DNA of 64,000 bases from IMGVR_UViG_3300010885_076238:140312-204311; one strand, 5' to 3'; counted from the stretch's first letter, positions 28,583 to 53,760 are shown. The notes: generated by a model from the sequence alone, not told the origin. Translations and numbers: made by a program.

Positions 28583-28590
28583 TTTATAGC

Positions 28591-30387: not shown

Positions 30388-30480
30388 ATAAATTCCCATT
30401 TGGATAAAAAAATAATAGTTGTCAGTCGATTACGCCAATTAATAATTATTTATAAGTATGCTTAGCTGCAAGGAGGTTAA

Positions 30481-31092: not shown

Positions 31093-31099
31093 TATTTTC

Positions 31100-32546: not shown

Positions 32547-32582
32547 TATTTTTTATACTATAATCTATTGAAAGGATTATTC

Positions 32583-36117: not shown

Positions 36118-36174
36118 AATGAATTAATTTATTGAATTTATCAATACAATATATATATAATTTGGAGGTAATTT

Positions 36175-36384: not shown

Positions 36385-36408
36385 AATGCTCGTGTTCGGA
36401 ACAATTTC

Positions 36409-37179: not shown

Positions 37180-37743
37180 TTATACAAAAATTTCACCTTC
37201 GGCGTCGAAGCCGATATTTTGAGCCATAAGTTGTTTGTGTGTTGCTAAAATATCACTGACTGGTTGTAATGAAAAGTTGTTTTGCAATAATCGCCAAGTG
37301 TTTTTTATTTGCGATTGTTTGTGTGCTACTGGGGGTTTTTCTGTGAAGAACTCTCCTTGTCCTTCCCGTCCCAATTCTTCAAAATCAGTTTTTTTAAATG
37401 TTGATATCCAAGGTTTGTAGTCTTTAACAACTTGTACATCTTGTTGTCTAATATACAAAGTTTTCTTTGGTTTAGTAGGAACCAGTATCCAAGGCATATT
37501 CCTAGGTATTAGGTAAGATACAACATTGTGATATTTTCCAGCAAAAGCTCCTGATCTAAAACGTCCGGGTGTTGTTCCTTGTGGTGTTTGTGCCCAATTT
37601 GGAACTTCGTTTGGAACAGATGTTGGACCACTTTCACCATTGTTTGTAATATAAAATTGTCTAAGATTAGAGTGGTCCCCAAAATCTCTTTTTTCTGCGT
37701 CTATTCTGAATACACGATTTTCAAGCCATAATTTAAAGTTCAT
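37180..37743 (-). CDS. Putative internal head protein
   Basis: MNFKLWLE start at 37743. Confidence 0.65.
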   Translation of the reverse strand: MNFKLWLENRVFRIDAEKRDFGDHSNLRQFYITNNGESGPTSVPNEVPNWAQTPQGTTPGRFRSGAFAGKYHNVVSYLIPRNMPWILVPTKPKKTLYIRQQDVQVVKDYKPWISTFKKTDFEELGREGQGEFFTEKPPVAHKQSQIKNTWRLLQNNFSLQPVSDILATHKQLMAQNIGFDAEGEIFV

Positions 37744-37747
37744 AATT

Positions 37748-37963
37748 TTATAAAATATAAGCTTCACCATTTTCAATTAATTTCAATATGAAATCGTAAG
37801 CTTTTCCTGAGTCTTTTCTTTCCATTTTTCTAATCTTATTATGATAAATTGAATCAACGATTATTGTTTTTCGTTCTCCATTTATATTAATGAGTATTCT
37901 TCCGTCTTTTGAATAACCGGTAAAGAGTACATTTTCATTTATAAAATCACGAAAGCTTTTCAT
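37748..37963 (-). CDS. Putative internal head protein
   Basis: MKSFRDFINE. Confidence 0.6.
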   Translation of the reverse strand: MKSFRDFINENVLFTGYSKDGRILININGERKTIIVDSIYHNKIRKMERKDSGKAYDFILKLIENGEAYIL

Positions 37964-38142
37964 TATTTTTTAGTCTTTTTAGTAAACAAATACAAGTTGG
38001 AAACTGTGCGTTCTCAGAATAATTTGATCCGCTAGATGGCATTCCTGTTTCACGAACTGGTTCCCATCCTTCTTCCAATAGTTTTTCAAGACTTTTTATA
38101 GAAGAGTTTTTTTCGTCTAAAACTAAAATTTGATATTTATAT

Positions 38143-38562
38143 TCATATTCCATATTGATCGTAATCTTCCTCTCCTGGGTGTTTTGAAATTCTACTATCA
38201 AGTTGTTTTTCTACATCTTGCTTCCATCCCATTTTATCTATATATTCATTTGTTTTTTTTATTAAATGATCTATATGATCCATGTAAGTGTTATAAGCTA
38301 ATCTAGCACTCATCTTTTTTTTATGATCATGTGATCCTGCTGAGTTTGAGTGATCAATATCTTCTTGAGACATTTTAATCATTTCTAATTCATCAGCATC
38401 TTCACCAAGACCTAACACTCTTAATTTTCTTACAAGATTATTATGATAGCTCTTATCTTGATAAACACCTTTATTTGGTCGGATATCATCCGCTTCCAAT
38501 AAATGAAAAAAAAGGTCAACCCATAAATCTTTTTTATCAAGCCATTCATAAAAGTTTTGCAT
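38143..38562 (-). CDS. Putative internal head protein
   Basis: MQNFYEWL...LLE. Confidence 0.6.
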   Translation of the reverse strand: MQNFYEWLDKKDLWVDLFFHLLEADDIRPNKGVYQDKSYHNNLVRKLRVLGLGEDADELEMIKMSQEDIDHSNSAGSHDHKKKMSARLAYNTYMDHIDHLIKKTNEYIDKMGWKQDVEKQLDSRISKHPGEEDYDQYGI

Positions 38563-38615
38563 ACATTATATATAATTTAATGATTAATTAATATGTTCGC
38601 ATTTATTTCGGAGAG

Positions 38616-38867
38616 ATGATGAGTGCCAAAAATTTTAGTTTTAAATTATGGTTGGAAGAAAACGCAGCACCAGCACCAGCACCAGCACCAGCACCAACTT
38701 CATCAACACCATCATCAACACAAACTTCGGATTCTGGATCTACCCTTTCTAAGGACATAGCAAAGGTGCCGACCAAAGTGGGATGCAGCACTGTTAGTTG
38801 TTGCAGTAAAGATTTTTTCAGAAATTGGCATTACAAAAAAAAGAGAAAAAAGAGGAAGAAAAAATGA
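38616..38867 (+). CDS. Small protein with AP repeat and basic tail
   Basis: FSFKLWLEE, APAPAPAP, KKKRKKRKKK. Confidence 0.55.
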   Translation: MMSAKNFSFKLWLEENAAPAPAPAPAPTSSTPSSTQTSDSGSTLSKDIAKVPTKVGCSTVSCCSKDFFRNWHYKKKRKKRKKK

Positions 38868-39679
38868 AAACGGGTTTCTGTTTTACAGGAGAAGGAGCTA
38901 GAGGAGCAATACAAGCAGGAATAGCCTTGGGTTTGCATAATCAAGGCATAAATGCTGACTTTACAATTGGAATATCATCAGGATCTATTTGTGCTGCTTC
39001 ATATGCGTATCTAGGACCTAAAGGATTAGCTGAAATGTGGTCTAATGTTAATAATATTTTTGATGTTTTTGGAATTAATTATAATTTAATTGGCAAAACA
39101 GGACTATTGAATCAGAAGCCAATGCAAAAAATCTTGCAAAAAGCGATGGAAAACGAACCAATATGTGAAAGCGTTGTTATTAGAATGAATATAGAAGATG
39201 GTTATTTAGACTATGTGTCAAATAAAGATGTATCTTCTAGCGAATTCGCAGAAGCAGTTTTAGGAAGCGTAGCCATTACTGCTTTAGTAGAAGATAGAAA
39301 TGGCTGGGTAGATGCTGGGAGTCGTCAAATAGCCCCTCTAGATCAATGTATAAGGGCAGGTTGTGATAATATCTATGTGATTATGGGTAGGCCTCTTCAT
39401 TTGCCTCCTTGGCAAAAACCTAAAGGTTTATTTAAATTATTTAATATGGCATTTAGGGCGTTCGATATAACCCTCTATGAAATAATGATTAGAGATATAA
39501 ATAGTTGCATAAGGGACAAGTCACACCCCGATTTCAAAAATGTAAATATTTTTTTAGTAGAGCCTAAAGAATTATTTTATGAAAGCGTTGAATTTGCCAA
39601 ATGCAAAAAAGGCGTTGTTTATGGGACAACAGAATACAACAGACATGATAAAAAAGGATTGAGAAAATTTATAAAATGA
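38864..39679 (+). CDS. Patatin-like phospholipase
   Basis: GEGARG, GISSG, DAG motifs. Confidence 0.85.
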   Translation: MKTGFCFTGEGARGAIQAGIALGLHNQGINADFTIGISSGSICAASYAYLGPKGLAEMWSNVNNIFDVFGINYNLIGKTGLLNQKPMQKILQKAMENEPICESVVIRMNIEDGYLDYVSNKDVSSSEFAEAVLGSVAITALVEDRNGWVDAGSRQIAPLDQCIRAGCDNIYVIMGRPLHLPPWQKPKGLFKLFNMAFRAFDITLYEIMIRDINSCIRDKSHPDFKNVNIFLVEPKELFYESVEFAKCKKGVVYGTTEYNRHDKKGLRKFIK

Positions 39680-39942
39680 ACTTCAAAGAATGGCTTATGA
39701 AAGAAGGTTCTAATACCGGATCTAAAACTGGTCTGTACCCTTTGGGATACGGAGGCGTAGGTTTGTATCCTCCATCATGGTACATAACAAGAAGCGCAGA
39801 TGCAATTTATTATTTCACAATTGATGAAAGAATATATAAATCTAAGGATGGAGGTCTTTTTGATATTAGTCATATTCCAGGCAATAATATAAAACAAAAC
39901 TCTGGCGAGGGTGGATCTTGGAACATTACGAAAATAAAATAA
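39676..39942 (+). CDS. Putative internal head protein
   Basis: MNFKEWLMKE. Confidence 0.6.
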   Translation: MNFKEWLMKEGSNTGSKTGLYPLGYGGVGLYPPSWYITRSADAIYYFTIDERIYKSKDGGLFDISHIPGNNIKQNSGEGGSWNITKIK

Positions 39943-39943
39943 C

Positions 39944-40405
39944 ATGACATTATCAATAAGAAAAATTAATTCTAAAGATTATAATGAAATAGAAAATATA
40001 GCAAATCAAAGCTACTCAGAAGATTATTATGAATCTGAAGAAAGTTTCATTAGCAAGATAGAGAAATTTCCAGATGGATGTTATGTCGCTGATCTAGACG
40101 GTGTTGTGGGATACGTAATATCATTTCCTTATTACGTAGGAAAATCTTTTCCCATCAATACGAATTACGAAATAGTAGAAAATCCAAATTGTTGGTATAT
40201 ACACGACCTTTGTGTTGTTGAAAGATTCAGAAACAAAGGTGTTGCAAAAACACTTGCAAAAGAAATAATTAAAAAATCATGGAATGTCGTGGCTCTAACA
40301 GCAGTGCAAAATTCAACTTCTTTTTGGAACAAGTTTGGATTTTTATCTTTTAAAATAGTAAATTACTGTAACCAAAAAGCAGACTATATGATATTAATTA
40401 AATAA
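39944..40405 (+). CDS. GNAT acetyltransferase
   Basis: YIHDLCV...RNKGVAK...FW.KFGF. Confidence 0.88.
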   Translation: MTLSIRKINSKDYNEIENIANQSYSEDYYESEESFISKIEKFPDGCYVADLDGVVGYVISFPYYVGKSFPINTNYEIVENPNCWYIHDLCVVERFRNKGVAKTLAKEIIKKSWNVVALTAVQNSTSFWNKFGFLSFKIVNYCNQKADYMILIK

Positions 40406-40858
40406 AGGAAAAAATGATTGAAGAAATAGATTATTCAGAAGAAGCAAAATTTGATCTGTTCGAATCAGTTAAAAAAGAAAAGACCTCCTGGGCCAGTTGC
40501 ATCATATCAAAAATGCCACCTTCTTATGAAGATGTTAAAATAAAATTAGAAAAGATGGATATGTCAATAACAAAAAAAGAATATGAAAAAATATGCAAAG
40601 AATTAGGATTTAATTTTTAGTCATAAATCTTTTCATAAATTGACTGCCGCTGTATTCGTTTCTTAGTTTTCTAATTTCTAAAATCGCTTCTTTTATTATT
40701 TCTTCTTTTTCTTTATCTTCAAACGTAATTTTACTTAATTTTTCAATTATATCCATAAGACTACCTCTTTAAAAATCTAAAGATACAACACTTTTCACCT
40801 CGAAATCTTCTGATTGAGTATTTCAATTTTTCAACTAATAATTTTAATTTAATAAACA

Positions 40859-41227
40859 TTATTTTATCCAAAATACAAAATCGTTTAGTTCTTCGTCAAA
40901 AGCAGATTCTAAGGCCCCAGAAGAAACCAAATTGACCAAAGAGTTACTAATCATTCTACTATTTAAATTTTCTATAATTTTATATAATGTCTTTTTAGAA
41001 AACTTATAGCCAGACTTGTATTTTTTGATCATAGTCATAGCTATGTTTTTAGTTTCTTCAATTGTTATAATAGAATCGATATTTTTTGGTTTTTCTAATT
41101 TCAATAAATAATCTTCTTTATCTTGAAAGGAATCATTGATTTCAATAAATTTTTCAAACGAGATTTCTCTTACTCGTTGTAAAAAATTATCTATTTCTTG
41201 ATCTTCTATGTAAAACCAATCATTCAT
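40859..41227 (-). CDS. Hypothetical protein
   Basis: ORF in a minus-strand operon. Confidence 0.6.
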   Translation of the reverse strand: MNDWFYIEDQEIDNFLQRVREISFEKFIEINDSFQDKEDYLLKLEKPKNIDSIITIEETKNIAMTMIKKYKSGYKFSKKTLYKIIENLNSRMISNSLVNLVSSGALESAFDEELNDFVFWIK

Positions 41228-41456
41228 CTTTTTTCTTTTTCTTTTTCTTAGGTTTTTCTTCCAAGTCTTGATCTTGTTTCTTTACTTCATTTTTCTTGTT
41301 CACAATAGAAAGAAGTCTGGCTCTTTCTTTTTTTGCTCCAACATCTTTTCCAAAAACAGAGTCTAAAGAAGATATTTGGTCCTGTGGACTTCTTTTATCT
41401 CTTTTTTGCTGTCTATCTTCAGCCTCTTGTTTTTTTAGATCTTTACTCTTTCCCAT
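41220..41456 (-). CDS. Small basic protein
   Basis: R(S/T)PQ.Q...LD...G...GAKKERARL pattern. Confidence 0.65.
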   Translation of the reverse strand: MGKSKDLKKQEAEDRQQKRDKRSPQDQISSLDSVFGKDVGAKKERARLLSIVNKKNEVKKQDQDLEEKPKKKKKKKDE

Positions 41457-41475
41457 ATTTATCCCTTTGTTAATG

Positions 41476-41697
41476 TTATTTCCAAAAACTTTTAATCTTG
41501 GTTTCTTCGTTTTTTGAAACTATTGTTTTTGCCAAAGTAGACAAAATAAAAACAGAAATCCAAGTCTTCCAATTATAAGGAGTGTCTAAATGAAATAAAT
41601 TATTCAATGCCCATATTACTAATAGAGGCGTATAAAATATAAGAAAAAAAGACAATAAAACCAAGCAAAATGTAACTAAAATTTCTTTATTATTCAT
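41476..41697 (-). CDS. Small membrane protein
   Basis: IWALNNLF...Y.WKTW; two hydrophobic segments. Confidence 0.65.
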   Translation of the reverse strand: MNNKEILVTFCLVLLSFFLIFYTPLLVIWALNNLFHLDTPYNWKTWISVFILSTLAKTIVSKNEETKIKSFWK

Positions 41698-43094
41698 TAT
41701 AAACTCCTTATAAAATCTTCCCAGTCCTGGGCAGATTTTTTTTCTTCAAACAAAACTCTAGACTTTTCTAGCAATTCTGTTCTTTTACTTTTATCTTTAT
41801 TTGTGGCTATGCTGACTGCCTTTTCAATATACTCTTCCACAGTATTAACACAGTAATCTTTTTCTAAATTTATTTTTTTATAGAAGCCATAAGTAAATCT
41901 GCCATTAATCTTATTAGTTGGCATAGAAACAACAGGAAGCCCACAGGCAAAACACTCAAGAGTAGAATTCATATTTCCAAAAGGATAGCTTTCTATAAAT
42001 ACATCACTTAGATACAACAAGTTCATATTGTCATTGGAATCTAATCTAGACAGAAATCTTATTCTATTAGCATATTCCAAACCAAGGTTTTTCTCAAGAG
42101 CAGTATAAAATATTAAATCAAAATTAGAAAATCCCAATTTGGTAAGAACAATTAAAGCCTTTTCGTCCTTTTCCAAGATGCCTTTAAATATATCAAACAT
42201 TTCTTTGCCCATCTTAAAAAAAGAAGAATTGCAAAAGTAAATGTTATTATCCTTATGTATTTGGAAATATTCTCTTGGTTTAAAGTTATTTATATAATTT
42301 TCTAGTTGTATTTTCTTATAAACAATCCCCAAAGAATCAAAAAGAATTGGCTTTTCTGTGTAGTTATTTTCCGGCTCTGTTTCATAGTACTTGGAAGTGA
42401 CAAAATAGTCCGCCGTTCCACTCGATTCACTATGTCCAAACGTGGTCACCTGAACAGGCGCAAGTCTAAAAAGCCCTATGCAAGAAGTCATAGCATCCAT
42501 GTTCATATCAGGATAAACTATAACGTCATACCGCCCAGCACCTATTTTTTCTATGTTTTTTTCTATGTTGTCTGTTTGTATTATGTTTTTACAATCTTTA
42601 TAAGACTCCATAACATCATTGCTAACAGGATATTGAGTCATTAGATCAATATGAAAATCAGGAACTTTTGATAAATGCTCTAAAATTCCATGAGTTGATT
42701 TATAAACAGAAGAATTACAATTCATTCTTGAGCTAAAAAACAATATTTTTTTATAAGGCTTATTGTATGGAGTTTCACATTTATATTTTTCATTTATTTT
42801 ATTAATATAATTGCCAAATGAATTTTTATAAATATAAATAAAATCTTCTAAAATATCTTTTATACTCAAGCCATAATAAGCCAAATAAAAAACAGGCAAG
42901 CCATTATTTAATAAATTTATATCAGCCTTCTCTTTTTCATAACTTGGTACGCTATCAACATACTCTTTGAATTTAGCTAAATGCTCTCTTACTTTTAATA
43001 AATGTTGGCCTCTTTCTTTATGATCCATTTCCAAAATGTAATGAGGAATTTGACTAAGAGGCTCAATTGCTTTTGATATTAGATTTTCATTCAT
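41697..43094 (-). CDS. GT41 (O-GlcNAc transferase/HMW1C-like) glycosyltransferase
   Basis: RLAPVQVTTFGHSESSG..DYF, DVFIESYPFG...STLE....GLPVV. Confidence 0.85.
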   Translation of the reverse strand: MNENLISKAIEPLSQIPHYILEMDHKERGQHLLKVREHLAKFKEYVDSVPSYEKEKADINLLNNGLPVFYLAYYGLSIKDILEDFIYIYKNSFGNYINKINEKYKCETPYNKPYKKILFFSSRMNCNSSVYKSTHGILEHLSKVPDFHIDLMTQYPVSNDVMESYKDCKNIIQTDNIEKNIEKIGAGRYDVIVYPDMNMDAMTSCIGLFRLAPVQVTTFGHSESSGTADYFVTSKYYETEPENNYTEKPILFDSLGIVYKKIQLENYINNFKPREYFQIHKDNNIYFCNSSFFKMGKEMFDIFKGILEKDEKALIVLTKLGFSNFDLIFYTALEKNLGLEYANRIRFLSRLDSNDNMNLLYLSDVFIESYPFGNMNSTLECFACGLPVVSMPTNKINGRFTYGFYKKINLEKDYCVNTVEEYIEKAVSIATNKDKSKRTELLEKSRVLFEEKKSAQDWEDFIRSL

Positions 43095-43110
43095 TATAAA
43101 ATTTCTACAG

Positions 43111-43192
43111 TGGTGGATGCTGGATTTGAACCAGCGAAGGCAATGCCATCAAATTTACAGTCTGACCCCTTTGACCGCTCGGGAAATCCACC
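43111..43192 (-). tRNA. tRNA-Tyr(GTA)
   Basis: Cloverleaf with long variable arm; loop CTGTAAA. Confidence 0.93.
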
Positions 43193-43198
43193 GGAAAA

Positions 43199-43269
43199 CA
43201 CGGAAAGAAGGAATCGAACCCTCACCAGCCGCTTTGGAGACGGCAGTTCTACCATTAAACTATTTCCGC
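43199..43269 (-). tRNA. tRNA-Trp(CCA)
   Basis: GCCGT-CTCCAAA-GCGGC anticodon arm. Confidence 0.92.
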
Positions 43270-43327
43270 ACTCGCAACTCTGCGTCAGCCTCCGAGTAAT
43301 ATATTATAATAAAATGCTATAGAAAAA

Positions 43328-43807
43328 TCAACATAATTTTTTGTATCTATTTTTTCTTCCATTTCCCCTATTCCTGCCTTTGAAAGTTGGCAAAGTTGCA
43401 TCGCAATTATTACATATAATTCTAAAATTAGATATTTCGTTATTTTTTGAATTTCCATCAATGTGGTCACTGACCAATGGAATTTTAAGCCCTGTCCATT
43501 CTGATAGGCCGCACATCATACATTTATGTCCGTATTTATGTATTAAATACGCTCTAACTAATCTACGAATGCTACAGTCTGTGTGTGTTTTGTAATTTCC
43601 ACTTTCTACTGTTTCAGTTAGTCTTCTAATATTTTTTTCTTGAAAATTTTTATTTTTATTCCAAGGAATGGATCCTTTCTTTTTACCAGCTAATTTTGAA
43701 TGAGTGTGTTTTATTTTTTGAAGATTGTTTTTACAACACATTTCGTGTGCAACTAGCGAGCCTTTGTTTTCTATTTTTTTATTACAAAATTGACATTGAT
43801 TTTTCAT
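43328..43807 (-). CDS. HNH homing endonuclease inserted in the tRNA cluster
   Basis: CMMC...DHIDGN..NN...N...C.NC; N-terminal C2H-type finger, PWNK motif. Confidence 0.88.
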   Translation of the reverse strand: MKNQCQFCNKKIENKGSLVAHEMCCKNNLQKIKHTHSKLAGKKKGSIPWNKNKNFQEKNIRRLTETVESGNYKTHTDCSIRRLVRAYLIHKYGHKCMMCGLSEWTGLKIPLVSDHIDGNSKNNEISNFRIICNNCDATLPTFKGRNRGNGRKNRYKKLC

Positions 43808-43817
43808 AATGCTTGAG

Positions 43818-43904
43818 CAGAGGCCCAGGGAATCTAACCCTGACCGGTTTTATCCGGTCCGCTTTAGCAAAGCGGTGCAGCAAAACAGTATCTGCCTGAC
43901 CTCT
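43818..43904 (-). tRNA. tRNA-Ser(GCT), atypical D/T loops
   Basis: CCGCT-TTGCTAA-AGCGG, long variable arm, G73; D-loop lacks GG and T-loop is TTAGATT. Confidence 0.85.
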
Positions 43905-43908
43905 AAAA

Positions 43909-44044
43909 CTGGCGAAACAGGATTCGAACCTGTAACCTAGCGGTTAATCCACTGCTGGGGTTTGAACCCAGTAATCTCCAGCCTTTTGGGCTTTAATTCA
44001 GTGGCTTTATACAGCCGCTCGCTCTACCGTTGAGCTATTCGCCA
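43909..44044 (-). tRNA. tRNA-Asn(GTT) interrupted by a 64-nt insert in the anticodon
   Basis: 5' half 44044-44011 ends AGCGG-CT-GT; 3' half 43946-43909 starts T-AA-CCGCT; U1-A72 and G73. Confidence 0.88.
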
Positions 44045-44059
44045 ATAAATCTAATTATA

Positions 44060-44251
44060 TTATAGAGAACATTTTTTTTCAATAGCAGTTTCAGATATAG
44101 CAACTGTATTCAATACTTTATCATATCCACAAATTTCCCAATCTACTTTATAAAATAGTTTATCTTCTATTTTTTCTAATATTTTTGTTTCAACGGTTCT
44201 TTGTCCTATTTTAAGAATAACCAATTCATTAACGGAAAATTTATGATTCAT
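44060..44251 (-). CDS. Small hypothetical protein
   Basis: Coupled ORF with GAGG RBS. Confidence 0.5.
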   Translation of the reverse strand: MNHKFSVNELVILKIGQRTVETKILEKIEDKLFYKVDWEICGYDKVLNTVAISETAIEKKCSL

Positions 44252-44466
44252 TTGTTTGCCTCAAGTACAAAATAATCAGGCTTTGAAGCAAAAACTCTAC
44301 CAAATAAAGTTAGCTTTTCTGCTCGATCAAACGCTTCATTTTTGTCATTTGTTTCATATACTATTTGTGAAAAACTATCAACCACTACATATTTTTTTTC
44401 AGATTTAGGCGTAGAGCAAGAGCAAAAATTTATAATTAATAGAGAAATAATTAAGCGAGAAAGCAT
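44248..44466 (-). CDS. Small putative lipoprotein
   Basis: Hydrophobic N-terminus followed by Cys. Confidence 0.5.
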   Translation of the reverse strand: MLSRLIISLLIINFCSCSTPKSEKKYVVVDSFSQIVYETNDKNEAFDRAEKLTLFGRVFASKPDYFVLEANK

Positions 44467-44520
44467 TTGTTTTCATCCTTGATGGGTTAATGTGAGTATA
44501 CCAGAATAACAATTAAATAA

Positions 44521-44551
44521 AAAGGGAGGATTGTTTTCACAATCCTCCCTT
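44521..44551 (-). terminator. Intrinsic terminator after tmRNA
   Basis: agggaggattg-ttttca-caatcctccct with a T-run on the minus strand. Confidence 0.8.
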
Positions 44552-44553
44552 AG

Positions 44554-44902
44554 TGGAGTCGAGGGGAGTCGAACCCCTGTCCGTAAGCGTACTCAATACG
44601 GCCTCTACACGTTTGTTTCATTGTTCATAAGACTTCATTAACCACAATGAACAAAGGTCTTTGAGTCTTTCAACCTATTTTCTCATATTGGGCTAAGTTG
44701 ACCAGTCCAATACCAGCAGGATTTTACATCAAACTTTTGGACGCTTCCCGCGTGGCTTCCTAAGTTCGTGGTTGCCTTCTCAGGCAGCCATTGCGTAACT
44801 ATTTGTGCCGGTTAAGGCTTTAGTCGATTTTTACGAGGCCATCGACCAACCTCGACGTGCCACCAATATCTCCTATCACTACGTCGATACCATTACGACC
44901 CC
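44554..44902 (-). ncRNA. ssrA: tmRNA; predicted tag (A)GTNSYAMAA
   Basis: 5' GGGGTCG..GGTATCGAC, 3' GGGGTTCGACTCCCCTCGACTCCA with G3.U70; tag ORF GGC ACA AAT AGT TAC GCA ATG GCT GCC TGA. Confidence 0.93.
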
Positions 44903-44913
44903 TTCACGGAATA

Positions 44914-45156
44914 TTATAGTTCATTATCGGCAAAAGTAAACTCTTCTTCTTTAATTAATCCTCTTGAAATTAAATATTCAAAAGTATCAAATAATTTTTT
45001 ACATTTTAGTTCATGCAATTGAGCTATTCCTATAAGAGCGTTTGAAATTTCATCTGCTTCTAGATTGTAATCCAAAATAGATTCGGCCAAAAGACTAACG
45101 TCGTCTTTTGTGTTCCAACACTTCATTATTTGCTCTTCTAAATCAAAACGATTCAT
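44914..45156 (-). CDS. Conserved phage hypothetical protein (RFDLEEQIM.CW)
   Basis: Familiar large-phage motif; AAGGA RBS. Confidence 0.7.
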   Translation of the reverse strand: MNRFDLEEQIMKCWNTKDDVSLLAESILDYNLEADEISNALIGIAQLHELKCKKLFDTFEYLISRGLIKEEEFTFADNEL

Positions 45157-45178
45157 GATTATTCCTTTTTAAAGTTAC

Positions 45179-46342
45179 TCAACAAAATCTTTGATCAAAA
45201 TTGCCAAATAGAAAATCTTGACGCAAAGAAATCATATCCATAATATGAAATTTAGACAATATCAAATTATCATAGAAATATAGATTTTCTTGTTTCTTGC
45301 TAAATTTTATCTTTTGATCATTAGAATCCTCAAAAGCAATTCCATTTTCAAAAATCCATTTCTTGTCATTGAAGTTATAGTTTTCAAAATTAAAATTTAT
45401 ATTAGAAACTATAGTATCAACCACTTCAACAAAACCGTTTTTATTTAATTTAAGAATGCATCTAGAATTTATTTTAGATGCATCTTTTGCATAAAAAACC
45501 CATAAACTATCTTCGAACTTTTGTTCAAATATTTCTATTATTTCTTTAGGATCCTCAAATTCTTTAGATTCTATGAGAAGCTCTTCTAATTGATCGCAAT
45601 TAGCAATATTGCCTATATGTGTGAATCTTGCATTTTCAATTAATCCTGTGTAGCTTTCAAAATTAGGATTAGGAGATAAAAAATAACATTCAGTCACAGG
45701 AACTTTAGCTATTCTAGCTAATAAATATATAACTTCGTCATCAACAATAGAAGATTCTTCGGAACAATTGTTCAAATAATCATTTGCTCTTTCATAATTT
45801 CTAATTTTATCCAAAGCAAATTTCGATAAAACAACATGCTCGCAGCCAGATGCAAAATATGGAATTGTCTTAAATTTATTTAAATCATTTGTTCCAACAA
45901 ATAAATCCATTTTCTTAATTACATTTTGAAGACCTTCGCTGATTTCATTTTTACTTAATAAAATTCTTAGAGAAGTCCTGTCGATATATCTTGGCAAATT
46001 ATAAAAAAAAGATGAAGAACCGGTGATTACAATAGGATCTTCATAATTATAAAAATAATCTAATCGTTTTATTGTTGAATCAATATCGGTGCAAGAATCA
46101 TCGCCAACTTGAAAAGCCCATCTAGATTCAATTTCATTTTTTAAAATATATTCAATAAATCTTGTTGAAGAGCTTCCAGAAAAAATAACCCAATCAAATG
46201 CTTCTGGCAAAAAGGAAGGTCTTGGCTCATTAGATAAAAATGCAACCTTAAATTTAAATTTATTAGATTTAAATCCTATTTTTAAAAAATTAAAAATTTT
46301 ATTTATATCAGAAACAAGAACAAAAAGAGTTAGATCTAACAT
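45179..46342 (-). CDS. Hypothetical protein, possible GT-A glycosyltransferase
   Basis: W.FQVGDDS resembles a degenerate DxD context. Confidence 0.5.
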   Translation of the reverse strand: MLDLTLFVLVSDINKIFNFLKIGFKSNKFKFKVAFLSNEPRPSFLPEAFDWVIFSGSSSTRFIEYILKNEIESRWAFQVGDDSCTDIDSTIKRLDYFYNYEDPIVITGSSSFFYNLPRYIDRTSLRILLSKNEISEGLQNVIKKMDLFVGTNDLNKFKTIPYFASGCEHVVLSKFALDKIRNYERANDYLNNCSEESSIVDDEVIYLLARIAKVPVTECYFLSPNPNFESYTGLIENARFTHIGNIANCDQLEELLIESKEFEDPKEIIEIFEQKFEDSLWVFYAKDASKINSRCILKLNKNGFVEVVDTIVSNINFNFENYNFNDKKWIFENGIAFEDSNDQKIKFSKKQENLYFYDNLILSKFHIMDMISLRQDFLFGNFDQRFC

Positions 46343-46360
46343 TGTGATAAGAATCCTAAA

Positions 46361-46434
46361 TCTAGGTGGAGGGAATTGAACTCTCGACCTCTTGCTCCCA
46401 AAGCAAGCGTTCTGCCAGACTGAACTACACCTAG
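46361..46434 (-). tRNA. tRNA-Pro(TGG)
   Basis: CTTGC-TTTGGGA-GCAAG. Confidence 0.93.
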
Positions 46435-46438
46435 TAAG

Positions 46439-46511
46439 TGGAGAAGATGGGACTCAAACCCACAACCTCCGCGTTGCAAACGCGATGCTCTATCAATTGA
46501 GCTACTTCCCC
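46439..46511 (-). tRNA. tRNA-Ala(TGC)
   Basis: G3.U70; loop TTTGCAA. Confidence 0.92.
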
Positions 46512-46515
46512 TTAG

Positions 46516-46586
46516 TTCCGGGACTACGATTCGAACGTAGAAAAAAAGAACCAAAATCTTTTGTGATACCGTTTCACCATCCCGGA
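46516..46586 (-). tRNA. tRNA-Gln(TTG)
   Basis: AAAGA-TTTTGGT-TCTTT. Confidence 0.9.
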
Positions 46587-46603
46587 GAATTACATGAATC
46601 GAG

Positions 46604-46676
46604 AGCGGGTGATCGGGTTCGAACCGACGACAGTTTGATTGGAAATCAAAAACTCTACCAACTGAGTTACACCCGC
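46604..46676 (-). tRNA. tRNA-Gly(TCC)
   Basis: GCGGGTG acceptor, U73, loop TTTCCAA. Confidence 0.93.
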
Positions 46677-46679
46677 AAA

Positions 46680-46752
46680 AGCTAGCGGTCGGAATTGAAC
46701 CGACGACAGGCAGTTTACAAAACTGCTACTCTACCAACTGAGTTACGCTAGC
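46680..46752 (-). tRNA. tRNA-Thr(TGT)
   Basis: GCAGT-TTTGTAA-ACTGC. Confidence 0.93.
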
Positions 46753-46774
46753 GTCAAATTATATTAGTATGTCA

Positions 46775-49108
46775 TCAACATTCTTTTCTTAAATTTGCAG
46801 CATAAAAATCGAATCTTTCATGTTCTGTTGGGGTTGCTAATAAAACTGCTGCTCTAATATTTTCTTTTAGTAGTTCTTGATAGCAGTGGCTCATTATTGT
46901 TTGTTCAAAAGGATGGGCATATTTTGTTTTCAGATAGCAATTATAATTTCCTTCTTTGGATAATACAATAGGCCAATTACAAATATAAATTTCTCCGGTT
47001 GCATAAGGAACTCCGTCATGAGATTTTATATTTTCAAATTTAAGGCAAGGAGAATTTGGGTCAAATCCGTGTTCGGGAAGCTTGCAATAATTTGGCCATC
47101 TTTCTTGTCTGACTGATTGGGGCACGTTGTACCAAGCCCATTGTTTTTCATTTGTTCCATAGAACTCAGAAAAATTTAGCTTTAAGAAATCAAATTTTTC
47201 TTTTTTAATTATTTCTAAACACTTATTGAATAGATCATCTATGTATCTATTGAATCCTGTTTTGCAGACGTAGTCCTGTGTGTCAACAAAAAACATATCG
47301 TCTTCAAAAAAGAAATAGTGACTTAGGTCTTTTTGTTCATTGAAATGCTCAGCGACCCATTGTCTTCCACCTGTGATGCCTATATTATCTTTCTTGATAT
47401 GTTCGAATCCATATTCTTCACATAACTCTAAATATCTTGGTGTTGTTGACAAGTCTGTTGAATTATCTAATAAAAATTTCTTGGTTTTCTTTAGAAAATT
47501 TTCATCATAACTTACCATTGATTTCAATAGAGTTTCAAATTGTTTTGGAGAATTAAATGTTATAACATATAGTCCTACGCCGTTAGTTTTAGGCTTAGGG
47601 ACTACTTGCGTATACTTTTTGAGTTCTTCAAAAAAGGGCCAAACCAAACCGTTTCCTTCTACCTCGAATCTGTGAATGGTCTCAGGATTCTGATGGCAGA
47701 GTATTGTGAATATGCACTCGTCTGCCCCCATTAAATTTTGTTGCAAGGTTGAATTAAGTGTAGCGTAATATGATTCATTGATTTTATGAATCGCTTCTTT
47801 TTCTCCTCCAAAAAACCCACCACGAGCCACATAGTTTACAAAATCTGTTCTGCAATGTTTTGCCATAGCATTACGTTCAAAGCCATGTATTTCGGTATTG
47901 CCTGTATACGGGTAGGTTATATTCATAAATTCAGCATGGTTTGAAACCATGTAATTTTCTAAATTATTTAAAACTTTATCTTGATGAAAGTACCCGGAAC
48001 CGACAGTGTTTGTTAGTCCTCCATCTATCCAGAAAAAATACTTTGAATTGAATGGATTTAGTACTGCTGAGTCGTTTACCATAAACATTTTTGTAAACAT
48101 CATGGCGTTATAATATCTTAGAGCTGCTTGTGGAGATTCTCTAAGCCATCCTGCCTGGGAGAGCCAATTTTCGTCTTGTCTAATTTCTTGGATTTTATCA
48201 AAAAAGGGATTCCAAGTTTCAAAATCTTTATTTTCTTTTATGAATATTTTGGTTGGTTTTCCTTCTCTTATTTTTTCGACTTCTTCTCTTAGAGAGCTTG
48301 GTATCCAAATACACATTTGGACGTTTGTTGCTAGCATCTCAAAGAATTTTTCTTTATAGTAAGAAAACTCTCTATGCGCCCAACCTTGTAAATTTTCTCT
48401 TTCCAAATCCCAAAGTCCAGTAACAATAGTTATATCTTTGTTTATTTCATTATCATCAACCATTACAACCTCTTTTTTTATATTTCTTCTTATTATTTTA
48501 AGGGCCATAGAAGACCAGCCAGATTCCCATCCACAAGTCGCAATAGTTTCAAATCTATATTTTTTTTCGTCGAAGGAATCGGAAAATGCTTTTATACTAT
48601 GATGTTCCCAACCAGGATAGTTGTGAACATCATCTATAATTAGTACGGCTTCATCTTCTAGCCAATTGAATATAATATCAAAAGCGTTTTTAGAAGAAGA
48701 ATAGAGATCTAGATCAACATGGGCAAATTTTATTTTTTGATTTTTTTCTAGTAGGAATTTTTCAAGAGTATCTTCTATTTTACCTACGATAAATTTATTT
48801 TTTTCAGTATCATTTGGAACATTTGTGTTGAAGTGATCTTTGCTAAAGATTAATTCATCTTTTTCTGTTTTCCAATCTTCAGGTAAGCCAGAAAAAGTAT
48901 CAAATCCATAAACAACATGATCTTTCGTATTGTTGTTTATCATTTGTAGCGTATGACCACTAAAAACGCCCAATTCCATAAAAAGAGAATTTATGTTTAT
49001 GTCTTTTAAGACATGCTTGAAGTAATCTGGCTGATACCTCCAATCTTTGACGGGATAGTCAGGGGCACCAGAATTTTCTATTATTTTAACTATTTCATTT
49101 ACATTCAT
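46775..49108 (-). CDS. Fusion: TylF-like methyltransferase + HtrL/WlaTC-like + GT-A glycosyltransferase
   Basis: ELGVFSG..GFDTFSGLPEDW..HVDLDLYSS; TIVTGLWD..FFWIDGG; FFEDD. Confidence 0.8.
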   Translation of the reverse strand: MNVNEIVKIIENSGAPDYPVKDWRYQPDYFKHVLKDININSLFMELGVFSGHTLQMINNNTKDHVVYGFDTFSGLPEDWKTEKDELIFSKDHFNTNVPNDTEKNKFIVGKIEDTLEKFLLEKNQKIKFAHVDLDLYSSSKNAFDIIFNWLEDEAVLIIDDVHNYPGWEHHSIKAFSDSFDEKKYRFETIATCGWESGWSSMALKIIRRNIKKEVVMVDDNEINKDITIVTGLWDLERENLQGWAHREFSYYKEKFFEMLATNVQMCIWIPSSLREEVEKIREGKPTKIFIKENKDFETWNPFFDKIQEIRQDENWLSQAGWLRESPQAALRYYNAMMFTKMFMVNDSAVLNPFNSKYFFWIDGGLTNTVGSGYFHQDKVLNNLENYMVSNHAEFMNITYPYTGNTEIHGFERNAMAKHCRTDFVNYVARGGFFGGEKEAIHKINESYYATLNSTLQQNLMGADECIFTILCHQNPETIHRFEVEGNGLVWPFFEELKKYTQVVPKPKTNGVGLYVITFNSPKQFETLLKSMVSYDENFLKKTKKFLLDNSTDLSTTPRYLELCEEYGFEHIKKDNIGITGGRQWVAEHFNEQKDLSHYFFFEDDMFFVDTQDYVCKTGFNRYIDDLFNKCLEIIKKEKFDFLKLNFSEFYGTNEKQWAWYNVPQSVRQERWPNYCKLPEHGFDPNSPCLKFENIKSHDGVPYATGEIYICNWPIVLSKEGNYNCYLKTKYAHPFEQTIMSHCYQELLKENIRAAVLLATPTEHERFDFYAANLRKEC

Positions 49109-51709: not shown

Positions 51710-53011
51710 TTATTCCAATTGTTTTTTAAACATTTCTTTAATTTTTTCTTTATTAATAGTTTTAATTAATTGGTTTCTTGCAAAAGGATGCGAATTAGAA
51801 AGTTCAGCAGAATTCCATCCAACTAATTCTTCTCTATTTGGGACAAATTTAGCAAAGGCTTTAACCATTTTTGTCCATTTTGGTTTTAGACTTCTTCCTT
51901 CTACATTGAAGAGTTCGACCCAATTTCTTATTTGTTCTTCTGATAGTCCTGAGATTTTTTTACTTGCAAGTAAATCTTCTAAGTTATCTAAATTGAAATC
52001 TTTGAGTTTCAACAAACAAACAACTGCACATTTTTCTTGACTAGTCCAGTTTGACAAGACATTTTCAACTTCATCTATTGGATTGTCTTGTAATATCCAT
52101 GCTAAGGCCAAGATTTTATCTTTTTTATTAGAAAAATCAGGAGGAACATCTAAATTTAAAGAAACATTTTTAAATATTTTTTCTAAAAGTCCAACTTTGC
52201 TATAGTTTTCCAAATATTTTCTTGGATCAATATCAGGATTGGTGAGTCCTTTCAAGAATTCTTCTCTTATTTTTTCATAAGGAAGACTATCAACTTCTGA
52301 TCTTAATTCTGCTATTGCCTTTTTTATATCTTTATCTAATTCACCCTTTCCGTATTGAGAATAAAATCTTATTGTTCTCATCATTCTTAGTTTATCTTCT
52401 CTAAATTTAGTCTCAGGATTTCCTATAGATTTTATATTGCCATGGACTATATCGTACCATCCCTTTTTAGTTGGATCGTATAATTTATTATTTTCCCCAT
52501 CAGATTTTGATAATTCAATATACAAAGAGTTTATGGTGAGATCTCTTCTTTGGGAATCATGTTCGATGTTATCTGTGTATTGGTCGCCTTTCATAAGTGT
52601 TGAAATTTGAAATTCGTCTCCTTCAACATTAACGATTACATTGTTTCCTTCTATTGTGAAAGATTTCTTATGATTATCTTGAGAAAATCCATAATTTTTA
52701 AGTATGATTGATACTTGTTTTGGAGTGGCATCAGTTGCGAGGTTGTAATTCTTGGGAGTTTTATTTCTCAAGAAATCCCGAACAGAACCGCCTGTTAAGT
52801 ATAGGGATTTTCTAGGCATCTTAATTTCTTTCGAAGTATCTTTCATTAAAGAAATATCACTGCTTTCTTCAAAAGCTTTTATAATTGGCTTCATGTTTGA
52901 TGGTGGTACAAAGCCTTTTTCTAATTTTATAAATTCTTTCTTCCAATCCTTATTTTCGGTTTGTTCCGAGTTTTCTATTTTGGATTCAAGAAATTTCTTA
53001 AAAGATTTCAC
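51710..53011 (-). CDS. Class II CCA-adding/poly(A) polymerase homolog with DxD replaced by NxN
   Basis: GGSVRD..PKNYNLATDATP, RRDLTINSL, EDKLRMMR.IRF; GTG start with GGAGG RBS. Confidence 0.85.
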   Translation of the reverse strand: MKSFKKFLESKIENSEQTENKDWKKEFIKLEKGFVPPSNMKPIIKAFEESSDISLMKDTSKEIKMPRKSLYLTGGSVRDFLRNKTPKNYNLATDATPKQVSIILKNYGFSQDNHKKSFTIEGNNVIVNVEGDEFQISTLMKGDQYTDNIEHDSQRRDLTINSLYIELSKSDGENNKLYDPTKKGWYDIVHGNIKSIGNPETKFREDKLRMMRTIRFYSQYGKGELDKDIKKAIAELRSEVDSLPYEKIREEFLKGLTNPDIDPRKYLENYSKVGLLEKIFKNVSLNLDVPPDFSNKKDKILALAWILQDNPIDEVENVLSNWTSQEKCAVVCLLKLKDFNLDNLEDLLASKKISGLSEEQIRNWVELFNVEGRSLKPKWTKMVKAFAKFVPNREELVGWNSAELSNSHPFARNQLIKTINKEKIKEMFKKQLE

Positions 53012-53760
53012 ATTTCCTCCTCTTCTCTTTGCCAATTATAATCACCACTAGCAGTTTTTTTCTTATTATATTTGAATACGTTAATTAAAATAAAATAACC
53101 ATTTTTTTCCAAATTCATTTGTTTTTCAATGGTTGGATTTTCTATATCGTATATATTTTGCATTTTTTTATCTTTATCTTTTAATCTTAATTGATTATAA
53201 ATTTTAATTTTAGACAAAGCGGTTGTAAATTCTAAAGCAATATTATAAAGAGACATTTTGTAATTTCCAACAATGTCTTTATTTTCTGTCTCTAAACCTT
53301 CATAATAAGGTTGAAACTTATTTTCAAAATTTGAATTATTAAGTTCGCCAACCTGAACTACTCGGGGATCTCTTTCAGGTTCTGGGATTATTTGTGAAAC
53401 TTTAAAGAACGTATGTCTTCTATTAGAAATGGAAATGGGATTCCAACCTTCAGGCACGTTGTCTGGGCCAAATGGCATCTGTAGGACCATGTTGTCTTGA
53501 ACCATTTGATCTTTGGTAAATAAATCAAGTTTTAAAATTGTACTAGCAGCATCAACAGGCCCCGTTTCTTTTCTCATTCTATCGCCCATGGCTTGAACCA
53601 AATTGCCAGCAACTGTTAGTGGAATGCCAGGTTCATTCGAATGGCCGAACGTAGAATAAGGGCTTAGTTTTCCTATTCTTAAATTTTGAAGGTCAGCGGC
53701 AGCAGATCGAACTTTGCCAGTGGCTTCTTTTATTTGTATCCATTCACTAAATTTTTTCAT
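53008..53760 (-). CDS. Putative internal head protein
   Basis: MKKFSEWIQIKE start at 53760. Confidence 0.6.
   Translation of the reverse strand: MKKFSEWIQIKEATGKVRSAAADLQNLRIGKLSPYSTFGHSNEPGIPLTVAGNLVQAMGDRMRKETGPVDAASTILKLDLFTKDQMVQDNMVLQMPFGPDNVPEGWNPISISNRRHTFFKVSQIIPEPERDPRVVQVGELNNSNFENKFQPYYEGLETENKDIVGNYKMSLYNIALEFTTALSKIKIYNQLRLKDKDKKMQNIYDIENPTIEKQMNLEKNGYFILINVFKYNKKKTASGDYNWQREEEEM

What the first reader, a model, noticed from the sequence alone, without database searches (positions are those of the whole stretch)
43909..44044. tRNA-Asn with a miniature tRNA-like intron inside its anticodon
Seen: an otherwise canonical tRNA-Asn (U1-A72, G73) is split at GT|T (or G|TT) by 64 nt (44010-43947): ATAAAG-CCACTG-AATTAA-AGCC-CAAAA-GGCT-GGAGATTA-CTGGG-TTCAAAC-CCCAG-CAGTGG-AT. 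The insert has its own acceptor-like stem (CCACTG/CAGTGG) stacked on a perfect T-arm, plus one small hairpin. Established: bacterial tRNA introns are group I/II (hundreds of nt) and archaeal ones use bulge-helix-bulge motifs; this fits neither. Colicin E5-type nucleases cut Asn tRNA between positions 34 and 35. Inference: a new intron type excised by tRNA-processing nucleases and ligated by an RNA-repair ligase, or a two-elbow decoy tRNA against anticodon nucleases or tRNA-sensing defences.
Basis: partly seen in the sequence, partly recalled or inferred. Interest (0 to 1): 0.9.

Follow-up and report, generated by a model that had tools for sequence, protein, structure and literature searches.

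The report
tRNA-shaped intron inside phage tRNA-Asn
A large T4-like phage carries a tRNA-Asn gene whose anticodon is split by a small, conserved insert shaped like a miniature tRNA; it fits no known intron class and sits next to a homing-endonuclease gene, so it may be a new way of interrupting and repairing a gene.

Summary
Window 44044-43909 (- strand) is a tRNA-Asn(GUU) gene with its own sigma-70-like promoter. It is split after anticodon base U35 by 64 nt (44010-43947) that fold into an acceptor-like stem stacked on a T-arm, plus one hairpin.

It is neither chance nor an assembly error. Eight distinct relatives from independent metagenomes keep the same insert with compensatory base changes, and the exons keep a perfect Asn cloverleaf. 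At least five other, sequence-unrelated inserts occupy the same phosphodiester of other phage tRNA-Asn genes. Most are also tRNA-shaped, and one is a complete tRNA-Gly with CCA.

The insert is not a group I or II intron, not a bulge-helix-bulge intron and not a known ribozyme. Endonuclease genes, mostly HNH (window 43328-43807), lie beside many of these split genes.

Best reading (inferred, untested): homing endonucleases keep the insert in place at the DNA level. At the RNA level, RNase P and RNase Z-type enzymes cut it out and a ligase joins the exons. Two gaps remain: a 5-nt A-rich spacer in this class is unexplained, and no RNA ligase was found in the window. I found no published description.

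The parts
44054..44082 (-). Sigma-70-like promoter (TTGAAA-17-TATAAT) ending 10 nt upstream of the tRNA 5' end
   Evidence: 11 of 12 matches. TATAAT or extended -10 boxes sit at the same place in relatives L001, L007, L009, L046 and L049.
44011..44044 (-). Exon 1 of tRNA-Asn: acceptor 5' strand, D-arm, anticodon-stem 5' strand, loop C32-U33-G34-U35
43947..44010 (-). 64-nt intervening sequence (the whole insert)
44006..44010 (-). A-rich 5' spacer AUAAA (consensus NNAAA in classes A and D); role unexplained
43999..44005 (-). Insert position +1 (G) plus acceptor-like 5' strand CCACUG
   Evidence: helix 1: 100% paired, 2 pairs with double changes. The 1-72 pair is G.A in class A and U-A in L034.
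43973..43998 (-). Extra hairpin (AAUU/GAUU and AGCC/GGCU stems, CAAAA loop) in place of the D and anticodon arms
   Evidence: helices 2 and 3 (for example AAUU/AAUU becomes AACC/GGUU in L006, and AGCC/GGCU becomes AGCU/AGCU)
43955..43971 (-). T-arm mimic: CUGGG - UUCAAAC - CCCAG, with a T-loop of the UUCRANN type
   Evidence: helix 4. The T-loop is conserved in classes A-D and F.
43947..43954 (-). Acceptor-like 3' strand CAGUGG, then A72 and U73; the insert ends right after position 73
43909..43946 (-). Exon 2 of tRNA-Asn: U36-A37-A38, anticodon-stem 3' strand, variable loop, T-arm, acceptor 3' strand, G73; no encoded CCA
43817..43904 (-). tRNA-Ser(GCU), 4 nt downstream and probably co-transcribed
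43328..43807 (-). Free-standing HNH endonuclease gene (159 aa) inside the tRNA cluster; candidate homing endonuclease aimed at uninterrupted tRNA-Asn genes
   Evidence: phrog_10822, E 2.7e-17. Homologues lie next to split tRNA-Asn genes in L007, L036 and L040.
51710..53035 (-). Phage tRNA nucleotidyltransferase (CCA-adding enzyme family). It fits the CCA-less tRNA genes and could also act on the released mimic. Its link to the insert is only inferred.

Best explanation
The insert is a real intervening sequence in a functional phage tRNA-Asn(GUU) gene, and it is under selection. It has the shape of a D-armless tRNA: an acceptor-like stem stacked on a T-arm. It belongs to a wider, previously undescribed set of tRNA-shaped inserts that all sit between U35 and U36 of phage tRNA-Asn genes.

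Proposed RNA route (inferred, not tested): the precursor is made from its own promoter. RNase P cuts 5' of the mimic's position +1. An RNase Z-type 3' processing activity cuts after its position 73, which is exactly the 3' junction. The tRNA body holds the two exon halves together, and they carry 3'-OH and 5'-phosphate ends. In this class the AUAAA tail must first be trimmed off. An ATP-dependent RNA ligase then seals the anticodon loop.

Proposed DNA route (inferred): free-standing homing endonucleases such as the neighbouring HNH protein cut uninterrupted tRNA-Asn genes at or near this site. The insert makes the phage's own copy immune and travels with the endonuclease.
For: Shown by tools:
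- The outer gene is a complete tRNA-Asn once the insert is removed. It has a strong promoter.
- Across 14 distinct split genes, 99.7% of outer stem cells are paired, 17 of 21 pairs show compensatory changes, and G73 is invariant. The exons are therefore under tRNA-type selection. Asn makes up 7.1% of codons in the window's large ORFs.
- The insert's structure is supported by covariation. It occurs once per locus and only in tRNA-Asn.
- Five further, unrelated inserts occupy the same phosphodiester. Classes B to F are tRNA-shaped, with about a 12-layer acceptor/T stack. Classes B, C, E and F start exactly at +1 after U35. Classes A and B end after nt 73, and classes C, E and F after nt 76. Class E ends in NCCA. 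Class F is a full tRNA-Gly(UCC)-CCA.
- Endonuclease genes lie within about 150 nt of the split gene in the window, L007, L003, L036 and L046, and within 75 nt in L040. Remnants of one lie beside it in L004 and L056.
- The same HNH family accompanies three unrelated insert classes, A, E and F.
- Inserts are more alike than their exons between subgroups: 73-87% against 64-72%. L003 against L004 gives insert 90%, exons 71% and nearly identical flanks.

From established knowledge: acceptor/T-arm minihelices are substrates of RNase P and tRNase Z. These enzymes leave 3'-OH and 5'-phosphate ends, which Rnl-type ligases join. Homing endonucleases in phage tRNA clusters and 'collaborative homing' are documented (PMC2988022, PMC2790892, PMC6083498).
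Against: - No transcript data, so neither splicing nor cleavage has been observed.
- A plain RNase P cut in class A (and class D) would leave the conserved spacer NNAAA on exon 1. Precise trimming back to U35 has no known mechanism.
- Class D ends after nt 74, not 73.
- No Rnl1, Pnkp, RtcB or other RNA ligase was found among the window's ORFs of 170 aa or more. Only 64 kb of the 204-kb contig could be read.
- A 210-aa ligase-like protein is encoded by relatives (the contigs of L001, L003, L004 and L007). It resembles the adenylation domain of DNA ligases, and two pattern scans did not find it on the window's contig.
- No endonuclease gene was found beside the split gene in L001, L006, L009, L013, L032, L034 or L038.
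- No insert-free allele of the window-type exons was found, so presence/absence polymorphism is not shown.
- Classes B to G were found with a pattern that fixed CTGT...TAA, so their shared site is partly imposed by the search. Class A was found without any exon constraint.
Confidence: 0.45

Rival explanations
1. The insert is never spliced out. Either the 136-nt chimera itself, or the tRNA halves plus the released roughly 59-nt tRNA mimic, are the functional products. Possible roles are a decoy for anticodon nucleases or tRNA-sensing defences, or for enzymes that bind the tRNA elbow.
For: Both the outer tRNA shape and the inner mimic are conserved. No ligase was found in the window. L013 carries two intact tRNA-Asn genes besides the split one, so there the split copy need not decode. 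Phage tRNAs are known players in conflicts with tRNA-cleaving defences (general knowledge).
Against: The anticodon-loop halves CUGU and UAA and the Asn discriminator G73 are kept even in class A, which was found without any exon constraint. The window holds no other tRNA-Asn, although Asn makes up 7.1% of codons. Unrelated inserts, including a normal tRNA-Gly, occupy the same site, which fits 'removable filler' better than a specific decoy design.
Confidence: 0.2
2. A dedicated, still unknown protein endonuclease (phage- or host-encoded) recognises the tRNA-like fold and cuts both junctions precisely. An RtcB- or Rnl-type ligase then joins the exons.
For: It would explain the exact U35|N junction despite the 5-nt spacer in classes A and D. 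Many window ORFs have no recognisable family.
Against: No candidate gene co-occurs with the insert across the loci examined. In classes B, C, E and F the junctions coincide with canonical tRNA ends, so no special enzyme is needed there.
Confidence: 0.12
3. The insert is a new small self-cleaving or self-splicing ribozyme.
For: There are invariant unpaired nucleotides (AAAG before the stem, GAA after it, a CAAAA loop) and a three-way junction.
Against: No known ribozyme family matches even at E<=10. 64 nt is far below any self-splicing intron. Unrelated inserts, including an ordinary tRNA-Gly, sit at the identical site, and they share only the tRNA shape.
Confidence: 0.08
4. The insert is a selfish DNA scar. 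It only protects against a homing endonuclease, and the tRNA gene is dead.
For: Endonuclease genes are adjacent, and no splicing machinery was identified.
Against: Exon helices keep pairing through many compensatory changes, and the promoter is retained. The insert's RNA structure is also kept by covariation. Neither is expected for a dead gene.
Confidence: 0.07
5. The split gene is an assembly or sequencing artefact.
For: None found.
Against: Identical copies come from independent assemblies (IMG/VR contig, two JGI metagenomes, a Logan run) and diverged copies from other samples.
Confidence: 0.01

Closest known systems
Archaeal and eukaryotic tRNA introns (bulge-helix-bulge, splicing endonuclease plus RtcB or Trl1)
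   Same: A short protein-dependent intron in the anticodon loop of a tRNA; the exons stay together through the tRNA body; a ligase is needed.
   Different: The position is 35|36, not 37|38. No bulge-helix-bulge motif can be drawn. The host is bacterial (tmRNA, sigma-70-like promoter, T4-like phage), and bacteria lack the splicing endonuclease. The predicted ends are 3'-OH and 5'-phosphate, not 2',3'-cyclic phosphate and 5'-OH.
Group I introns in bacterial and phage tRNA anticodon loops
   Same: They interrupt the anticodon loop of bacterial-type tRNA genes and are often linked to homing endonucleases. A genuine one sits in the tRNA next door in L003 and L004.
   Different: The insert is 64 nt against about 200 nt or more, with no group I core (no RF00028 match at E<=10). 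It cannot self-splice by that route.
tRNA-like elements released by RNase P and RNase Z (mascRNA from MALAT1, mitochondrial 'tRNA punctuation', plant t-elements)
   Same: An acceptor/T-arm mimic embedded in a longer transcript serves as the signal for cutting at its two ends.
   Different: Those flanks are not rejoined. Here the mimic lies inside another tRNA, whose halves would have to be ligated. It is also in a phage of bacteria.
Phage T4 anticodon-loop repair (PrrC nuclease, Pnkp, Rnl1)
   Same: A broken tRNA anticodon loop is resealed by a phage RNA ligase in a T4-type phage.
   Different: That is repair of host-inflicted damage at 33|34 of tRNA-Lys, with end healing. No Rnl1 or Pnkp homologue was found in the window or the class A-G loci.
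Collaborative or trans homing, and endonucleases in phage tRNA clusters (F-CphI with the psbA intron; mobE with I-TevIII; SegB in the T4 tRNA region)
   Same: A free-standing endonuclease gene lies next to an endonuclease-less intron in a conserved gene of a T4-like phage, and the history of the intron disagrees with that of the exons (PMC6083498, PMC2790892, PMC2988022).
   Different: In the known cases the intron is a self-splicing group I ribozyme. Here it is a tRNA mimic, and the endonuclease's target is untested.
Split and permuted tRNA genes (Nanoarchaeum, Cyanidioschyzon) and rRNA intervening sequences cut by RNase III
   Same: These are disrupted stable-RNA genes whose pieces are processed by general RNases.
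   Different: They use other mechanisms (bulge-helix-bulge, or no religation), occur in other organisms, and contain no nested tRNA shape.

Membership tests
Group I intron | Conserved P3-P9 catalytic core (Rfam RF00028), about 200 nt or more | tested here: not met
   No match at E<=10 over 42800-47000. The insert is 64 nt. The same model does detect true group I introns in L003 and L004.
Group II intron | Six-domain ribozyme of several hundred nt, usually with a reverse transcriptase ORF | tested here: not met
   64 nt, no Rfam match, no ORF.
Bulge-helix-bulge (archaeal/eukaryal) tRNA intron | Two 3-nt bulges carrying the splice sites, separated by a 4-bp helix | tested here: not met
   No run of 4 consecutive pairs is possible between the junction strands in any of the 7 class A genes tested. 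In classes B, E and F the insert's terminal pair abuts the junction.
Bulge-helix-bulge (archaeal/eukaryal) tRNA intron | A splicing endonuclease (EndA/Sen) is available | tested here: inconclusive
   None among the window ORFs scanned, but only 64 of 204 kb was seen. The host is bacterial-type (tmRNA).
Known small self-cleaving ribozymes (hammerhead, twister, pistol, hatchet, HDV-like and others) | Match to the family covariance model | tested here: not met
   No such family at E<=10.
tRNA-Asn (outer gene) | Cloverleaf with GUU anticodon and G73 after removal of the insert | tested here: met
   Rfam 56.1 bits. ARAGORN calls tRNA-Asn on the joined exons. Helices are kept by compensation.
tRNA (inner module) | 7-layer acceptor stem stacked on a 5-bp T-stem with a 7-nt T-loop (UUCRANN) | tested here: met
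tRNA (inner module) | D-arm and an anticodon arm with a 7-nt loop | tested here: not met
   One hairpin with a 5-nt loop replaces both arms, and ARAGORN finds no tRNA in the insert. It is a tRNA mimic, not a tRNA. Only the class F insert (L036) is a true tRNA.
RNase P / RNase Z substrate | Cleavage at +1 and after nt 73 by the enzymes | not testable with these tools
   Only the geometry (12-layer stack, T-loop) could be checked. The 3' junction coincides with nt 73. The 5' junction lies 5 nt upstream of +1 in this class.
Intron with a free-standing homing endonuclease (collaborative homing) | An endonuclease gene adjacent to an endonuclease-less intron | tested here: met
   HNH at 43328-43807. 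The same holds in L007, L003, L036, L040 and L046.
Intron with a free-standing homing endonuclease (collaborative homing) | The endonuclease cuts the intron-less allele at the insertion site | not testable with these tools
   Needs an enzyme assay. No intron-less allele of these exons was found in IMG/VR.
Intron with a free-standing homing endonuclease (collaborative homing) | The history of the intron disagrees with that of the exons | tested here: met
   Insert identity exceeds exon identity between subgroups. L003 against L004: insert 90%, exons 71%, nearly identical flanks.

The most novel reading that the evidence does not exclude
This is a new mechanistic class of intron in bacterial viruses: tRNA-shaped introns, ranging from whole nested tRNA genes to stripped-down minihelices. 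The cell's own tRNA end-processing enzymes (RNase P and RNase Z) remove them and an RNA ligase joins the exons. They arose and are maintained because homing endonucleases attack the uninterrupted tRNA-Asn anticodon region, and any removable 'filler' makes the gene immune.
Probability: 0.35. Interest if true: 0.92.

Novelty: categorically new. Interest (0 to 1): 0.82.

Why it matters
All bacterial and phage introns known so far are self-splicing ribozymes (group I or II). Protein-dependent tRNA splicing is regarded as an archaeal and eukaryotic trait. A conserved, non-ribozyme, tRNA-shaped insert in the anticodon of functional phage tRNA genes would have three consequences:

- Bacteria and their phages would be able to splice tRNAs with housekeeping RNases and a ligase.
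- It would give a simple route by which an intron can be born: any tRNA-like filler that makes a gene immune to a homing endonuclease.
- Standard tRNA finders would be missing such genes. The default ARAGORN run missed this one, and a quick scan turned up dozens of other interrupted phage tRNAs.

The idea can be tested directly with one 136-nt transcript and commercial or easily purified enzymes.

Tried and rejected
- **Known RNA families:** Rfam at E<=10 around the site gave only tRNA and tmRNA.
- **Cultured phages:** no GenBank phage carries this or the L036 split gene.
- **Bacterial and archaeal genomes:** the general split-Asn pattern gave only archaeal tRNAs with ordinary introns, tandem genes or duplicated halves, and no bacterial chromosome copy.
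- **Insert-free allele:** none with window-type exons in IMG/VR.
- **Extra copies:** the covariance model found no further copy of the insert in other tRNAs of the window or the loci.
- **RNA ligase or healing enzymes near the gene:** Pfam and PHROGs scans of all window ORFs of 170 aa or more, and tblastn with T4 Rnl1 and Pnkp, found none.
- **ORFs flanking the tRNA cluster:** ORF 41697-43094 is an HMW1C-like glycosyltransferase, and ORF 45179-46342 stays unassigned.
- **Mini-ligase lead:** a 210-aa protein near the split gene in L003, L007 and L056 is a stand-alone adenylation domain most like DNA ligases. It was not found on the window's contig, so it is not usable as support.
- **Spliced copies in assemblies:** contigs carrying the HNH gene all have the unspliced spacing.
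- **Alternative pairing:** the minimum-energy fold pairs the exon anticodon-stem strands with the insert stem strands, but this is not conserved in L003 and L004, so I set it aside.
- **Literature:** seven full-text searches found no description of short, non-group-I or tRNA-shaped introns in phage tRNAs. The one paper claiming an 'interrupted tRNA' in a phage concerns a 2.5-kb ARAGORN artefact-like call.

Full report
**What is in the window.** On the minus strand, 44044-43909 reads as a tRNA-Asn gene cut in two. Exon 1 is 44044-44011: acceptor strand UGGCGAA, D-arm, AGCGG, then CUGU. A 64-nt insert follows at 44010-43947. Exon 2 is 43946-43909: UAA, CCGCU, variable loop, T-arm, UUCGCCA, G73. 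The Rfam tRNA model aligns end to end across the insert at 56.1 bits. The default ARAGORN run misses the gene. A strong sigma-70-like promoter (TTGAAA-17-TATAAT, 11 of 12) ends 10 nt upstream. The gene lies in a tRNA/tmRNA cluster. Going downstream on the minus strand from the tmRNA at 44551-44902, the order is two small ORFs, the split Asn gene, tRNA-Ser, an HNH endonuclease ORF, tRNA-Trp and tRNA-Tyr. The window holds no other tRNA-Asn, and Asn is the third most used amino acid in its large ORFs at 7.1%.

**The insert is a structured RNA under selection.** Alone it folds into CCACUG/CAGUGG stacked on CUGGG-UUCAAAC-CCCAG, with one further hairpin. An exon-independent pattern for the insert, and a general pattern for split Asn genes, recovered the same kind of insert in other large uncultured phage contigs and metagenomes. 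The relatives are L001, L003, L004/L056, L006, L007 and L009, plus a reduced relative, L034. A covariance model built from five of them finds exactly one copy per locus, always in tRNA-Asn. On the nine-sequence alignment, 94.4% of stem cells pair, and 7 of 19 pairs show changes on both sides. No shuffle out of 500 reaches this, and shifted registers give 26-50%. That alignment is fitted to the model, which favours the structure somewhat. L001 and L007 end the insert with A, so the split is unambiguously U35|U36 there.

**The exons are under tRNA selection.** Across 14 distinct split genes, 99.7% of outer stem cells pair, and 17 of 21 pairs show compensatory changes. G73, the Asn discriminator, is invariant. 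This rules out a decaying pseudogene. Recurrence in independent assemblies rules out a chimera.

**It belongs to a wider set of inserts.** The general pattern also found sequence-unrelated inserts at the same phosphodiester of other phage tRNA-Asn genes.
- Class B (L008, L046, L049) is a 68-nt mini-cloverleaf.
- Class C (L013) and class D (L034) are 50-nt minihelices.
- Class E (L032, L040) is a cloverleaf with a 5-nt 'anticodon' loop and an encoded NCCA end.
- Class F (L036) is a complete tRNA-Gly(UCC) with CCA. ARAGORN recognises it, and Rfam scores it at 56.8 bits.
- Class G (L038) is not obviously tRNA-like.

In every tRNA-shaped class the stack from the T-loop to pair 1-72 has about 12 layers. 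In classes B, C, E and F the insert starts exactly at +1, right after U35. In classes A and B it ends after nt 73, and in classes C, E and F after nt 76. These are the positions where RNase P and the 3' tRNA-processing enzymes cut (established enzymology: minihelices are substrates, and the products carry 3'-OH and 5'-phosphate). One caveat applies. For classes B to G the pattern itself fixed CTGT...TAA, so the shared site is partly imposed by the search.

**What it is not.** No group I, group II or small-ribozyme family matches even at E<=10. The same library does find true group I introns in the tRNA next to the split Asn gene in L003 and L004. No 4-bp helix of the bulge-helix-bulge type can form at the junction. 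The setting is bacterial: a tmRNA, a sigma-70-like promoter, and T4-type capsid, portal and prohead-protease genes in relative L006.

**The DNA-level side.** The ORF at 43328-43807 is an HNH endonuclease.
- A 68%-identical homologue lies 58 nt from the split gene in L007.
- More distant homologues of the same protein lie beside the class F gene (L036) and the class E gene (L040).
- Another HNH gene lies 40 nt from the gene in L003, with remnants of it in L004 and L056.
- A PD-(D/E)XK endonuclease follows the class B gene in L046.

So one endonuclease family goes with one site but with unrelated inserts. Within the window's subgroup the exons are 94-97% identical and the inserts 70-91%. Between subgroups the exons are only 64-72% identical but the inserts 73-87%. 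L003 and L004 share nearly identical flanks (by eye from the alignment) and a 90% identical insert, yet have entirely different, mutually compensated acceptor and T stems. This discordance, together with the endonuclease genes, matches what is known of free-standing homing endonucleases in T4-type phages, including in their tRNA clusters. It also matches 'collaborative homing' of endonuclease-less introns (PMC2988022; PMC2790892; PMC6083498).

**Most likely mechanism, and its gaps.** I infer that the insert disrupts an endonuclease target in the DNA. I infer that it is tolerated because its tRNA shape lets RNase P and RNase Z-type enzymes cut it out of the RNA, after which a ligase closes the anticodon loop. 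Three gaps remain.
- In the window's class a conserved spacer (AUAAA, consensus NNAAA) separates U35 from +1. It would have to be trimmed precisely, or another nuclease makes the 5' cut.
- No RNA ligase, kinase/phosphatase or RtcB was found among the window's ORFs, or by tblastn with T4 Rnl1 and Pnkp. Only 64 of 204 kb could be read. A 210-aa ligase-like protein is encoded on the contigs of L001, L003, L004 and L007, but it is a bare adenylation domain closest to DNA ligases and was not found on the window's contig.
- There are no expression data. Contigs carrying the HNH gene show only the unspliced spacing.

**Rival explanations and novelty.** The rivals are an unspliced decoy or sRNA cassette, a dedicated unknown nuclease, a new ribozyme, and a dead gene. 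They are weighed in their own section. Seven literature searches found no description of such introns. No cultured phage or reference bacterial genome carries one. I therefore rate the insert as a new kind of intervening sequence. The anatomy and the evidence for selection are firmly shown. The splicing route is inferred.

Noticed in passing
IMG/VR loci L065-L180 (e.g. L075 6628-6745, L087 9980-10106, L142 471-583, L160 3753-4185, L180 611-2311): A scan for a common D-arm placed too far from a T-arm found at least 67 distinct other interrupted phage tRNA genes with well-paired acceptor stems (6-7 of 7). They cover several identities, and some phages carry several. Many carry a roughly 40-nt insert of the form 'hairpin + ACAGCAA' that appears to sit in the 5' strand of the anticodon stem (about 28/29-29/30). 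No Rfam family other than tRNA matches. This looks like a second, larger undescribed class of phage tRNA interruption.
   Followed up: partly
L003 3341-3534 (-) and L004 4391-4584 (+): A true group I intron (Rfam 59-60 bits) interrupts the tRNA (ARAGORN: Arg, tct) directly upstream of the split tRNA-Asn. These phages therefore carry two different intron types in adjacent tRNA genes.
   Followed up: partly
L003 2950-3330 vs L004 4590-4970: The flanks are nearly identical (by eye from the alignment) and the insert is 90% identical, but the acceptor stem and T stem of the tRNA-Asn exons are completely different while still paired. Either the exon helices were replaced, or they are under diversifying selection.
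   Followed up: partly
L036 136-281 and 410-1024 (contig AUXO014497444.1): A complete tRNA-Gly(UCC)-CCA is nested inside the anticodon of a tRNA-Asn gene, followed 129 nt later by an HNH endonuclease ORF related to the window's.
   Followed up: yes
window 44551-44902 (-): Phage-encoded tmRNA (127 bits) with tag peptide GTNSYAMAA. Relative L009 has the same tag. The tag's ending resembles those I recall for Bacteroidota and Chlorobi, which is only a lead to the host.
   Followed up: no
window 51710-53035 (-): Phage tRNA nucleotidyltransferase (CCA-adding enzyme family). This fits the window's tRNA genes, where those I inspected encode no CCA end.
   Followed up: no
L007 9928-10557; L003 9767-10396 (-); L056 1695-2324; L183-L190: A 210-aa stand-alone nucleotidyltransferase (KxNG motif). 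AlphaFold gives pLDDT 84, and the best fold matches are the adenylation domains of ATP-dependent DNA ligases. It turned up on 13 IMG/VR contigs, four of which also carry the class A split tRNA-Asn. Its substrate is unknown.
   Followed up: partly
L046 750-1290 and 831-1241; L046 1998-2261; L049 731-878: Next to the class B split Asn gene, ARAGORN predicts another tRNA interrupted by 464 nt that contain a PD-(D/E)XK endonuclease ORF, and a further tRNA with a 173-nt insert. L049 has a 148-nt tRNA match. These calls were not verified.
   Followed up: no
L008 449-1032 (-); L049 962-1282 and 490-584: ROOL RNA (328 bits) and a drum RNA lie in the tRNA clusters of the class B phages.
   Followed up: no
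L013 9588-9661, 9667-9747, 10371-10492: This phage has two uninterrupted tRNA-Asn genes as well as the split one.
   Followed up: no
L006 7204-9702 (-): A T4-type portal protein gene carries an intein splicing domain, another mobile element in these phages.
   Followed up: no
window 27000-43100: A dense block of modification-type genes: FkbM methyltransferase, two sulfotransferases, an FGE-sulfatase-domain protein, a caspase-like peptidase C14 (32568-33509), a patatin phospholipase (38825-39679), an HMW1C-like protein glycosyltransferase (41697-43094), and a methyltransferase/HtrL fusion at 46775-49108.
   Followed up: no
window 43947-44044 (-): The insert's stem strands (CCACU ... AGUGG) resemble the exon anticodon-stem strands (CCGCU ... 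AGCGG) in swapped order, so the minimum-energy fold pairs exon with insert. This is not conserved in L003 or L004. It may hint that the insert arose by duplication in a window-type gene.
   Followed up: partly
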